The translations under genes and the position numbers were made by a program. Below, piece by piece: positions 43,507 to 44,959 of a DNA stretch of 64,000 bases (within the stretch, counting starts at the first letter, position 1; each line of letters begins with the position of its first letter). The DNA is from Isurus oxyrinchus (taxonomy: Eukaryota). The notes under the pieces are model-generated. The model had not been told where the DNA came from, did no database searches, and was given only the letters and a program-made list of their open reading frames with translations. The stretch is taken from assembly GCA_026770705.1 (NCBI GenBank), contig JANJGN010000049.1, positions 620,001-684,000 on the forward strand, given 5' to 3'.

Positions 43507-43806
43507 GTTCTTCCTTGTGGATGGAATTTCTTAAAGGAGTCGGCAGATCCTGATGGCTCACCACACAGTAGAACTCAGCCCCACTCAGCCAGGCTTGTGT
43601 TGAAATGTTCAGGTGGCTAACCACGCTGTTAGGATCCTCTCCCGGCTGGACAGCAATCTCTGATTTCAAAGGCTTCTTTTCTTGTGTCCAGGACACGAGG
43701 ACTCCATAAGGGGCGTTACTCACGCTGCAGGTTTAGATCACTGTCGCCTCCAGTAAGACCTGTGCTATTGGCGGCGGCTGTAGAGTAATTACGGCGTCGT
43801 TGCAGT
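43507..43806 (-). pseudogene. IGHM: IgM Cmu3 exon, inactivated (acceptor CG, in-frame TAA)
   Basis: 300-nt frame (D)[43 protein letters not shown]...[22 protein letters not shown]; stop at 43733-43735; pyrimidine tract ends tttccg instead of ag; donor GTGAGT intact. Confidence 0.9.
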
Positions 43807-44959
43807 CGGAAAGTGTGAAGCAGAAATGAGTGTCAACCAAAACATCATCTTCAGAATGAGAAACCCGGTATACAGCTTTCATTCTCACGACAGGAATATT
43901 TATTTGACCTGCCCCTGCCGTGTTAACGCCTTCATTATTTGAAGGTCAGTGACTTGCAATAATTCCGGGAGACTCCATAACATTCCCTGGGTATTTCCAG
44001 CCTGCGCCACTGGGAATGACTAAACCAAATGCCGGTCCAACAGTGTGAATAAATTCAGGTACAATCGTCTTACAGACAGAATATCACTCGTCCCGAAATC
44101 AAGGAATCAGAGAATGATAGAATGCTAACAGCACAGGAGGAGACCATTCAGCTCTCTATGTCTCTCTGTAAGAATAATGTGTGCCTTAACCCCATTTATC
44201 CTCCCCGTTCTGTCACGTGCGATAACATTTTCAAAAAAAATAAATGTTAAACTCTTTTTTTGAAATGTCAATTGAGTCCCAGCCTCAGAAATTCTTGGGG
44301 AAAATGAAAGTGATAATATTTCCCAGTGTGAGGAAAACGTTGCCAAAATCACCTTCCTCAGAATTTTCCTATCTCTAATTTGGAGGACTAAGCATTTTCT
44401 CCCTACTTCCAGTTTTATTAATTAACCGAAACACCACAATTCGATCACTCAGTAGACTTTTGTACTCAAAGGGAGGCAGCCGAGATTATGCAAACTCCAA
44501 TCAGCGCTGCTCAGACTGAAAACAGCAGCAGAAATAAAGTGCACATCTTTGTCAGGATTGAAGTCGTGGGCAATTACCAGTAAAGGCCTGCACACACCGA
44601 TCCTACTCATAATATGATCAATCAATTTCGGATAAAACTAAAACCAATGACTCATCACTCACTGTCCAACCTTTGAACAAAATGTCACCGTGTTTTGTGA
44701 GTTGATGGAATTCTGGACACCGGGGGATTCTGATTCAGAATGAACATGGGTTCAGTCCCCACTCCAGATGTTTGAACACAAGTGTAGCTGATACCAACAA
44801 TGTAGTACTGGGTGAGTATTGTATTGTGGGAGGCACCGACTTCAACATCAACTGTTGAGGCCCGTGAATACCTGCTTTGTCAGTGTGATGTCAAATTTCC
44901 CCAAATTCTCCCAAGTTTTGGGTCGTCCACAAACCTTTAAACTGTCCCCTGCAAACCAA

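What the first reader, a model, noticed from the sequence alone, without database searches (positions are those of the whole stretch)
43507..43830. IgM locus with only Cmu3 knocked out twice: possible in-frame three-C-domain IgM (Cmu1-Cmu2-Cmu4)
Seen: Cmu3 has lost its acceptor (ttctgcttcacactttcCG|ACTGC, 43808-43807) and has an in-frame TAA (43733-43735) just before its first core Cys. Leader, V, J, Cmu1, Cmu2, Cmu4, tailpiece, TM1 and TM2 are all open with GT/AG sites. All C exons have phase-1 boundaries, so skipping gives ...[15 protein letters not shown] in frame for both secreted and membrane forms. Known: nurse shark IgM1gj is a short IgM that lacks Cmu2; I know of no described Cmu3-less shark IgM. 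Inference: acceptor loss could have come first and freed the exon to gain a stop. The alternatives are a young pseudogene or assembly error; the rest of Cmu3 is barely decayed, so the lesions are recent.
Basis: partly seen in the sequence, partly recalled or inferred. Interest (0 to 1): 0.85.

Follow-up and report, generated by a model that had tools for sequence, protein, structure and literature searches.

The report
Shark IgM gene with dead Cmu3 exon
One shark-type antibody (IgM heavy-chain) gene cluster is intact except for its third constant-domain exon, which has a stop codon and no usable splice acceptor; it is most likely a recently disabled gene copy of a kind already known in sharks, not a new three-domain antibody.

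Summary
The window holds one unrearranged cartilaginous-fish IgM cluster on the minus strand (56197-36903): leader, V, D1, D2, J with recombination signals, Cmu1-4, tailpiece, TM1 and TM2.

The in-frame TAA at 43735-43733 is real; relatives have Leu (TTA) there. There is no AG where the Cmu3 acceptor should be.

All other exons are open with AG/GT sites, and skipping Cmu3 is in frame. That holds for any phase-1 Ig domain exon, so it is not evidence of function.

- The first AG downstream of the likely branch points is a frameshifting cryptic site inside the exon (43779-43778), so skipping is not assured.
- All damaging or unique changes lie in the 5' ~100 nt of the exon. The 3' 207 nt look normally constrained (dN/dS 0.14; relative rate 5 vs 6). 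This fits one recent local event better than stepwise decay of a freed exon.
- Skipping would remove the only hinge-type cysteine and the conserved DLPTPL motif.

Verdict: young pseudogene or null allele (about 0.7). A working Cmu3-less IgM is not excluded (about 0.1). No same-species reads, paralogues or transcripts could be reached.

The parts
56286..56297 (-). TATA-like box (GGTATAAATAGC) about 90 nt upstream of the leader ATG
   Evidence: No perfect octamer nearby, but the Chiloscyllium cluster L003 has none either.
56152..56197 (-). Leader exon (MGFVLCLCFLLACST, phase-1 donor gtaagt)
55726..56027 (-). V exon, open; Pfam V-set 1.5e-13; conserved Cys/Trp/YYC present
55687..55725 (-). V recombination signal: CACAGCG, 23-nt spacer, ACAGAAACC
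55254..55332 (-). D1 (coding 55304-55292) with 5' 12-spacer signal (CACTGTG) and 3' 22-spacer signal (CACGGTG .. ACAAATACC)
54871..54938 (-). D2 (coding 54909-54899) flanked by heptamers CACAGTG and CACAGCC; 12-nt spacer and GCAAAAACC on the 3' side
54462..54548 (-). J signal (GGTTATTTT, 23-nt spacer, CACTGTG; 54548-54510) and J segment (54509-54462, ..DYWGQGTMVTVTA, donor gtaaga)
48703..49002 (-). Cmu1 exon, open, AG/GT, C1-set 9e-13
47442..47753 (-). Cmu2 exon, open, AG/GT, C1-set 3e-19. It lacks the extra Cys (SPxCE) that many shark Cmu2 have; S. torazame P0023 lacks it too.
44968..46410 (-). Degenerate LINE fragments (reverse transcriptase and endonuclease-RT ORF pieces) inside the 3635-nt Cmu2-Cmu3 intron
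   Evidence: the intron is 2089 nt in Chiloscyllium
43849..43850 (-). Upstream cryptic AG (gaAG|AT). An exon starting at 43848 would be in frame (+33 nt relative to the native start) but still meets the TAA. The homologous intronic AAG exists, unused, in Chiloscyllium.
43816..43817 (-). Position where the native Cmu3 acceptor AG is expected by homology; it reads CA
43507..43815 (-).
43778..43779 (-). First AG downstream of the lost acceptor (ctacAG|CC). An exon starting at 43777 shifts the frame and stops after 20 codons.
43733..43735 (-). In-frame TAA replacing a conserved Leu (TTA); three substitutions within four bases (43737-43734) relative to cDNA L002
42620..43011 (-). Cmu4 plus secretory tailpiece and stop; internal donor for the membrane form after 42682. 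Matches human IgM Cmu4 plus tailpiece at about 1e-41.
42578..42583 (-). AATAAA 37 nt after the secretory stop
37052..37179 (-). TM1 exon (..NIWTTASTFIVLFFLIIFYSTAVTLVK). A Ser that the 7 other panel sequences conserve in the membrane segment is Ile here.
36903..36911 (-). TM2 exon (IK, stop)

Best explanation
This is a germline, unrearranged cartilaginous-fish IgM heavy-chain cluster (L-V-D1-D2-J-Cmu1-Cmu2-Cmu3-Cmu4/tailpiece-TM1-TM2). Its Cmu3 exon has recently been put out of action.

Shown:
- A nonsense codon replaces a conserved core Leu.
- No AG is left at or near the native 3' splice site.
- These lesions and the other unique replacements (E14A, T23I, V/I27S) all lie in one ~100-nt patch at the 5' end of the exon.
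- The rest of the exon and the rest of the gene look normal.

Inferred:
- One local event caused the damage. It could be a gene-conversion patch from a decayed paralogue or a clustered mutation.
- The event produced a young unprocessed pseudogene or a segregating null allele.
- If the cluster still rearranges and is transcribed, its pre-mRNA has three fates. It can use the first downstream AG (43779-43778), which gives a frameshift and an early stop. It can use the upstream AAG (43850-43849), which is in frame but runs into the TAA. Or it can skip the exon.
- The first two products should be removed by nonsense-mediated decay.
- The skipped product would encode a Cmu1-Cmu2-Cmu4 chain as a by-product, not as a selected antibody class.
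For: - Complete cluster anatomy with intact signals and splice sites everywhere except Cmu3.
- C1-set and V-set domain hits, and human IgM homology.
- Only one Ig cluster and only one Cmu3 copy in the window.
- TAA where 17 relatives have Leu.
- AG-free stretch 43848-43780 covering the homologous acceptor position.
- Relative-rate test with Chiloscyllium as outgroup: 12 vs 1 window-specific changes in the first 90 nt (p=0.003), 5 vs 6 in the remaining 207 nt.
- dN/dS against cDNA L002: 0.53 for the first 30 codons, 0.14 for the rest, 0.24 for the start of Cmu4.
- Every Cmu3-containing splice variant meets a stop.
- Literature: nurse shark has about 15 IgM loci, of which 9-12 are active, plus pseudogene Groups 6, 7 and 8 and pseudogene G2C (PMC2435157; PMC5192425).
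Against: - Everything outside Cmu3 is open, which would also be expected if a skipped product were under selection.
- Window-unique changes at otherwise invariant sites outside Cmu3 are no more numerous than in other panel members. These are Cmu4 W to R, tailpiece P to L, TM1 S to I and Cmu2 E to D. So there is no positive sign of gene-wide decay.
- No reads, population data, paralogues of the same species or transcripts could be examined.
- The relative-rate test rests on one cDNA of unknown species and one outgroup.
Confidence: 0.7

Rival explanations
1. A working three-constant-domain IgM (Cmu1-Cmu2-Cmu4). Loss of the acceptor forces exon skipping, as the CH1 donor mutation does in camelid heavy-chain antibodies. 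The in-frame product is expressed as receptor and secreted antibody and is kept by selection. The stop codon is a harmless later hit in a never-translated exon.
For: - The skip is in frame for both the secreted and membrane forms.
- All other exons, recombination signals, the TM donor and the poly(A) signal are intact.
- Both lesions fall in the one exon that skipping makes dispensable.
- Natural domain-deleted IgM exists: nurse shark IgM1gj lacks Cmu2 (PMC4279169), and teleost membrane IgM lacks Cmu4 or Cmu3-4 (PMC5192425).
Against: - In-frame skipping is a generic property of phase-1 Ig exons.
- Changes are confined to the 5' third of the exon rather than spread over a freed exon.
- A frameshifting AG is the first one downstream of the branch-point candidates, so skipping is not forced.
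- The skipped exon holds the only hinge-type Cys of this cluster. Cmu2 has Phe where many sharks have Cys, and there is no Cys at the Cmu1/Cmu2 junction. It also holds the DLPTPL motif shared with human Cmu3.
- Radical replacements sit at sites otherwise invariant in Cmu4, the tailpiece and TM1.
- No related Cmu3-less cDNA was found among the proteins reachable. Only automated Callorhinchus gene models lack Cmu3.
Confidence: 0.1
2. The constant region is dead but the V-D-D-J part stays in use. After rearrangement, the VDJ of this cluster is joined to the constant region of another cluster by the inter-cluster 'switching' described in nurse shark. Selection then keeps V, D, J and their signals intact.
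For: - V, D1, D2, J and their signals are intact.
- Expression of a V region with the C region of another cluster is reported for nurse shark (PMC4279169, citing Zhu et al. 2012).
Against: - It does not explain why Cmu1, Cmu2, Cmu4 and the TM exons are also intact; recency explains all of them at once.
- In the described cases switching follows expression of a functional receptor, which this cluster may not provide.
- Nothing in the window bears on it.
Confidence: 0.07
3. Assembly or consensus artefact, or a somatic or collapsed-paralogue chimera. Under this reading the real germline gene has an AG acceptor and a Leu codon.
For: - The region could not be checked against reads.
- Multi-copy Ig clusters are prone to mis-assembly.
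- The exon-wise mosaic of best matches could in principle reflect collapse.
Against: - Restoring the gene needs at least three separate base changes, not a homopolymer-length slip: TAA to TTA plus two at the acceptor.
- The surrounding patch carries about a dozen further substitutions of ordinary kinds.
- There are no N runs or junction signs near Cmu3; the nearest N run is at 41467-41599.
Confidence: 0.06

Closest known systems
Pseudogene IgM clusters of sharks (nurse shark Groups 6, 7, 8 and G2C)
   Same: One of many dispersed V-D-D-J-Cmu miniloci, non-functional while sister clusters work. This is a known and frequent state: about 15 IgM loci, 9-12 of them active, plus these named pseudogenes (PMC2435157; PMC5192425).
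   Different: Here the damage is limited to one exon and appears very recent.
Nurse shark IgM1gj
   Same: A cartilaginous-fish IgM heavy chain with three constant domains (PMC4279169). A similar Cmu1-Cmu3-Cmu4 model exists in Chiloscyllium (P0004).
   Different: IgM1gj lacks Cmu2, not Cmu3, and has a germline-joined VDJ. It is shown to be expressed in neonatal serum. The window cluster is unjoined, keeps Cmu2 and has no expression evidence.
Camelid heavy-chain-only IgG (CH1 skipped because of a splice-site mutation)
   Same: A splice-site lesion at one constant-domain exon that could give an in-frame domain-deleted heavy chain (my own knowledge of the camelid genes; reviewed in PMC6812646, listed but not read).
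   Different: The camelid lesion is at the donor, the exon carries no stop, and the product is abundant, conserved across camelids and accompanied by adaptive changes in V. None of that is shown here.
Teleost membrane IgM lacking Cmu4 (or Cmu3-Cmu4 in medaka)
   Same: Shortened IgM heavy chains made by splicing choice (PMC5192425).
   Different: Those arise from regulated splicing of TM exons to an earlier donor, with all exons intact. The secreted form keeps four domains. No case removes Cmu3 alone.
Automated Callorhinchus milii gene models without Cmu3 (P0009, P0010)
   Same: Predicted proteins that join Cmu2 or Cmu1 almost directly to Cmu4.
   Different: They are computer predictions of unknown support in a holocephalan. 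P0009 keeps a 25-residue stub of Cmu3 fused into mid-Cmu4, which looks like a modelling artefact.

Membership tests
Cartilaginous-fish IgM heavy-chain cluster | One V with 23-spacer signal, two D segments with flanking signals, and one J with signal, all within about 2 kb | tested here: met
   V 56027-55726 plus signal; D1 55304-55292; D2 54909-54899; J 54509-54462
Cartilaginous-fish IgM heavy-chain cluster | Four C1-set constant exons with phase-1 boundaries, homologous to Cmu1-4 | tested here: met
   Pfam C1-set on all four. 57-93% identity per exon to nurse shark, Triakis, Heterodontus and Scyliorhinus IgM. Human IgM Cmu3 and Cmu4 hits.
Cartilaginous-fish IgM heavy-chain cluster | Secretory tailpiece with penultimate Cys, internal donor in Cmu4, and two TM exons | tested here: met
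   ..[20 protein letters not shown] stop; donor G|gtaaac after 42682; TM1 37179-37052; TM2 36911-36903
Unprocessed Ig pseudogene / null allele | A lesion that prevents the normal full-length product | tested here: met
   In-frame TAA and no acceptor AG. Every Cmu3-containing splice variant hits a stop.
Unprocessed Ig pseudogene / null allele | Relaxed selective constraint across the gene | tested here: inconclusive
   Excess change only in the 5' 90 nt of Cmu3. Elsewhere, unique changes at invariant sites are no more frequent than in other panel members. This is expected if the lesion is very recent.
Unprocessed Ig pseudogene / null allele | No functional transcript or protein from the locus | not testable with these tools
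   No reads or transcriptomes of this species could be reached.
Naturally domain-deleted heavy chain made by exon skipping (camelid type) | Splice-site lesion at the skipped exon, and an in-frame junction of its neighbours | tested here: met
   No AG in 43848-43780. The Cmu2-Cmu4 join is in frame. A competing cryptic AG exists at 43779-43778.
Naturally domain-deleted heavy chain made by exon skipping (camelid type) | The shortened product is expressed and conserved (shared lesion in related species or paralogues, with purifying selection afterwards) | not testable with these tools
   No orthologous or paralogous genomic sequence of a close relative was available. S. torazame DNA could not be fetched.
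Naturally domain-deleted heavy chain made by exon skipping (camelid type) | The remaining domains keep what is needed for chain pairing and effector function | tested here: not met
   Outside the tailpiece, the only non-core Cys besides the light-chain Cys of Cmu1 is at the start of Cmu3 (DCND). It would be lost together with the DLPTPL motif. The functional meaning is inferred by homology.
IgM1gj | Germline-joined VDJ | tested here: not met
   V, D1, D2 and J are separate, with signals.
IgM1gj | Cmu2 absent | tested here: not met
   Cmu2 is present and open at 47753-47442.

The most novel reading that the evidence does not exclude
This cluster makes a real Cmu1-Cmu2-Cmu4 IgM. Obligatory skipping of a crippled Cmu3 exon yields a shorter receptor and secreted antibody that B cells can use. 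It would have no hinge disulfide and no Cmu3 complement-binding region. That would be a second, independently arisen three-domain IgM in cartilaginous fish, and a shark parallel to the camelid CH1-skipping trick.
Probability: 0.1. Interest if true: 0.6.

Novelty: new member of a known kind. Interest (0 to 1): 0.3.

Why it matters
As it stands, this is one more disabled copy in a multigene family where disabled copies are common. Its main use is for annotating the IgM clusters of this genome correctly.

Two things give it modest extra value:
- It is caught very early. Everything but about 100 nt is pristine, so it is a clean natural test of what a shark B cell does with a heavy-chain gene whose middle constant exon cannot be used: skipping, cryptic splicing, nonsense-mediated decay, and the effect on heavy-chain exclusion.
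- The packing of all lesions into one short patch hints at a local mutational or conversion event in the germline of an Ig gene.

If junction reads and in-frame VDJ enrichment were found, it would become an interesting case of antibody domain loss.

Tried and rejected
- **Exact look-up of the window's Cmu4 open frame in public assemblies:** not on record. No independent copy of the locus was available to confirm the lesions.
- **Closest Cmu4 hit P0002:** a 2.1-kb metagenome contig that stops before Cmu3.
- **S. torazame loci of P0023 and P0018**, the best Cmu1/Cmu2/TM and Cmu4 matches: the gene tables came back but no DNA.
- **Exact and degenerate Cmu3/Cmu4 DNA patterns** in metagenome and prokaryote genome collections: nothing found.
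- **Third protein search with Cmu2:** one S. torazame fragment at 76% identity, no same-species sequence and no Cmu2-Cmu4 cDNA. The species remains unidentified. Best identities are 80-95% to Scyliorhinus, Triakis, Heterodontus and two shark cDNA contaminants in bacterial assemblies.
- **First mixed alignment A1:** it aligned Cmu2 against Cmu4 and was discarded in favour of A2.
- **Missing promoter octamer as an extra lesion:** rejected, because the Chiloscyllium cluster lacks a perfect octamer too.
- **Cmu4 W to R, tailpiece P to L and TM1 S to I as proof of gene-wide decay:** rejected as inconclusive. Leave-one-out counts are similar in other sequences. From my own knowledge, some C1-set domains lack that Trp.
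- **Upstream AAG (43850-43849) as the true acceptor of a longer exon:** rejected. The stretch aligns with Chiloscyllium intron, and the frame still meets the TAA.
- **In-frame AGs that might rescue part of the exon:** 43766-43765 still reads into the TAA. 43703-43702 is a GAG site and would delete the first core Cys.
- **Not run:** the representative-protein search and structure prediction. Neither could separate the hypotheses, and a spliced Cmu2-Cmu4 sequence has no reference to hand in.

Full report
**What is there.**
The finding lies on the minus strand, inside the only immunoglobulin gene of the window (tblastn with six shark IgM chains). Reading and translating the region gives a classical unrearranged cartilaginous-fish IgM cluster:

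| Part | Coordinates | Notes |
|---|---|---|
| TATA-like box | 56297-56286 | |
| Leader | 56197-56152 | |
| V | 56027-55726 | 23-spacer signal |
| D1 | 55304-55292 | flanking signals |
| D2 | 54909-54899 | flanking signals |
| J | 54509-54462 | ..DYWGQGTMVTVTA, 23-spacer signal |
| Cmu1 | 49002-48703 | |
| Cmu2 | 47753-47442 | |
| Cmu3 | 43815 or 43806 to 43507 | disabled |
| Cmu4 + tailpiece | 43011-42620 | membrane-form donor after 42682; AATAAA 37 nt past the stop |
| TM1 | 37179-37052 | |
| TM2 | 36911-36903 | |

- Pfam finds V-set on the V exon and C1-set on all four C exons.
- Cmu4 plus tailpiece matches human IgM at about 1e-41. The Cmu3 fragment aligns with human Cmu3, including ..DLPTPL.. 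against ..DLPSPL...
- Per-exon identities to nurse shark, Triakis, Heterodontus and Scyliorhinus IgM run from 57 to 93%.
- The species itself is not in any collection I could reach.

**The observation.**
The TAA at 43735-43733 is in frame. It replaces a Leu that is present in all 17 elasmobranch Cmu3 sequences assembled (..EATVTLTC.. against ..EATVI*TC..). The closest DNA is L002, a shark cDNA that sits as a contaminant in a Salmonella assembly. It has TTA there.

The acceptor is absent, but not quite as described:
- L002 and the Chiloscyllium punctatum gene (L003) both carry 11 exon bases before the Cys codon.
- These align with window CACTTTCCGAC.
- The native exon start was therefore most likely 43815, and the dinucleotide before it is CA.
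- The conclusion holds either way. There is no AG on the minus strand between 43850-43849 and 43779-43778.

All other exons are open with AG/GT sites. Joining Cmu2 to Cmu4 gives ..[15 protein letters not shown].. in frame for both the secreted and membrane forms.

**How the exon would be handled.**
Candidate branch points (CTCAT, TTGAC) lie at 43857, 43833 and 43827.
- **First AG downstream, 43779-43778.** An exon starting at 43777 shifts the frame and stops after 20 codons.
- **Upstream AAG, 43850-43849.** This is in frame but reads into the TAA. Its counterpart in Chiloscyllium is intronic and unused.
- **In-frame AG at 43766-43765.** This also reads into the TAA.
- **AG at 43703-43702.** This is a GAG site, and its product would lack the first core Cys.

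So every Cmu3-containing product is terminated, and only full skipping gives an open frame. Skipping is plausible but not forced. Which route dominates is an inference that needs RNA data.

**Age and nature of the lesions.**
Against L002, Cmu3 as a whole has dS 0.26 and dN/dS 0.27. Split by region, the first 30 codons give 0.53 and the remaining 69 give 0.14. The start of Cmu4 gives 0.24.

With Chiloscyllium as outgroup:

| Region of Cmu3 | Window-specific | L002-specific | p |
|---|---|---|---|
| First 90 nt | 12 | 1 | 0.003 |
| Remaining 207 nt | 5 | 6 | 1.0 |

Some of the 5' differences are variants seen in other sharks. Four replacements occur in no other panel sequence: E14A, T23I, Leu24 to stop and V/I27S. 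With the acceptor position, all lie between 43817 and 43723. Only one such replacement lies in the 3' two-thirds.

The stop itself sits in a run of three substitutions within four bases.

The picture is one short damaged patch in an otherwise normally constrained exon. It argues against the scenario that the acceptor was lost first and a freed exon later drifted into a stop, because drift would not respect the 3' two-thirds. One local event fits better. It could be a conversion patch from a decayed paralogue. It could also be a clustered, non-templated mutation of the sort known from shark Ig genes (PMC4279169). I could not test this without paralogues of the same species.

**The rest of the gene.**
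A leave-one-out count of replacements at positions invariant in all other elasmobranch sequences gives:

| Exon | Count | Changes |
|---|---|---|
| Cmu1 | 0 | |
| Cmu2 | 1 | E to D |
| Cmu4 | 2 | R to Q; W to R in the ..AEEW.. motif |
| TM1 | 1 | S to I in ..FFLSIFYS.. |

In addition, a P to L change in the tailpiece (GKPS to GKLS) is seen in no secreted relative. These changes look radical. But other panel members score similarly, so they neither prove decay nor constraint. The promoter lacks a perfect octamer, and so does the Chiloscyllium cluster.

**Would a Cmu1-Cmu2-Cmu4 chain work?**
In-frame skipping carries no weight, because all Ig domain exons are phase 1-1 (established knowledge).
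- This cluster belongs to a subtype, like S. torazame P0023, with no Cys at the Cmu1/Cmu2 junction and Phe in place of the extra Cmu2 Cys.
- Its only hinge-type Cys is the one at the start of Cmu3 (..DCND..). Skipping would remove it.
- Skipping would also remove the DLPTPL loop. From my own knowledge, this loop is implicated in complement C1q binding in mammalian IgM.
- Cmu4 and the tailpiece Cys would remain, so some assembly is conceivable.
- No Cmu3-less shark IgM turned up among the reachable proteins. Only automated Callorhinchus models lack Cmu3.

**Comparison with what is known.**
- Pseudogene IgM clusters are a known part of shark genomes. Nurse shark has about 15 loci, of which 9-12 are active, and Groups 6, 7, 8 and G2C are pseudogenes (PMC2435157; PMC5192425).
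- IgM1gj is a three-domain shark IgM, but it lacks Cmu2 and is germline-joined. The window cluster fails both criteria.
- Camelid CH1 skipping is the closest mechanistic analogue for the novel reading.
- Teleost membrane IgM shows that shortened mu chains can function.

**Verdict.**

| Explanation | Probability |
|---|---|
| Newly disabled member of a known family (young pseudogene or null allele) | about 0.7 |
| Selected Cmu3-less IgM | about 0.1 |
| V-D-J kept in use through inter-cluster switching | about 0.07 |
| Assembly artefact | about 0.06 |

Interest is modest (0.3). The locus is worth a look in RNA-seq and repertoire data because the test is cheap and the locus is unusually clean.

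Noticed in passing
window 43737-43734 (minus strand): The stop codon lies in a run of three substitutions within four bases (ACATTA in cDNA L002, ATCTAA here). This is reminiscent of the tandem, non-templated substitutions described for shark Ig hypermutation, but here it is in germline sequence.
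   Followed up: partly
window 44968-46410 (minus strand): Degenerate LINE remnants lie inside the Cmu2-Cmu3 intron on the gene's strand: an RVT_1 ORF piece and an endonuclease-RT ORF piece. The intron is 3635 nt, against 2089 nt in Chiloscyllium.
   Followed up: partly
window about 37600-41500: The Cmu4-TM1 intron is largely a long, degenerate (TG)n/(CA)n tract with strong strand skew. It is interrupted by three N runs (39077-39205, 39572-39702, 41467-41599), which I did not look up.
   Followed up: no
window 9283-10005 (+): An open frame of 241 codons encodes tandem C2H2 zinc fingers (zf-C2H2 5e-43), roughly 27 kb beyond the 3' end of the IgM cluster.
   Followed up: no
window 14265-14558 and 19379-19642 (minus strand): Further reverse-transcriptase ORF fragments; the flanks of the cluster are rich in retroelement debris.
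   Followed up: no
L002 (GCA_018272985.1 contig JAGUME010000203.1) and P0001: Spliced shark IgM cDNA (Cmu2-Cmu3-Cmu4) is deposited as 'hypothetical protein' of Salmonella enterica and of Aeromonas veronii, which is contamination of bacterial assemblies. L002 is the closest known Cmu3 to the window (95% protein identity over 74 residues; dS about 0.26).
   Followed up: partly
window exons vs P0023, P0018, P0076, P0021: The best matches form an exon-wise mosaic. Cmu1, Cmu2 and TM1 are closest to S. torazame P0023 (83, 79 and 88%). Cmu3 is closest to L002/P0076 and Heterodontus. Cmu4 is closest to a different S. torazame cluster, P0018 (93%). This suggests exchange between clusters or uneven sampling.
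   Followed up: no
window 56027-55726: The V segment is only about 40-50% identical to the shark and chimaera VH in the panel, so it may belong to a divergent VH family. That would make locus-specific transcript assignment easy.
   Followed up: no
P0004 (Chiloscyllium punctatum chiPu_0018911); P0009 and P0010 (Callorhinchus milii): Gene models with missing constant domains: Cmu1-Cmu3-Cmu4 in bamboo shark (IgM1gj-like), and Cmu1-Cmu2-stub-Cmu4 and Cmu1-Cmu4 in elephant shark. These are automated predictions and unverified.
   Followed up: no
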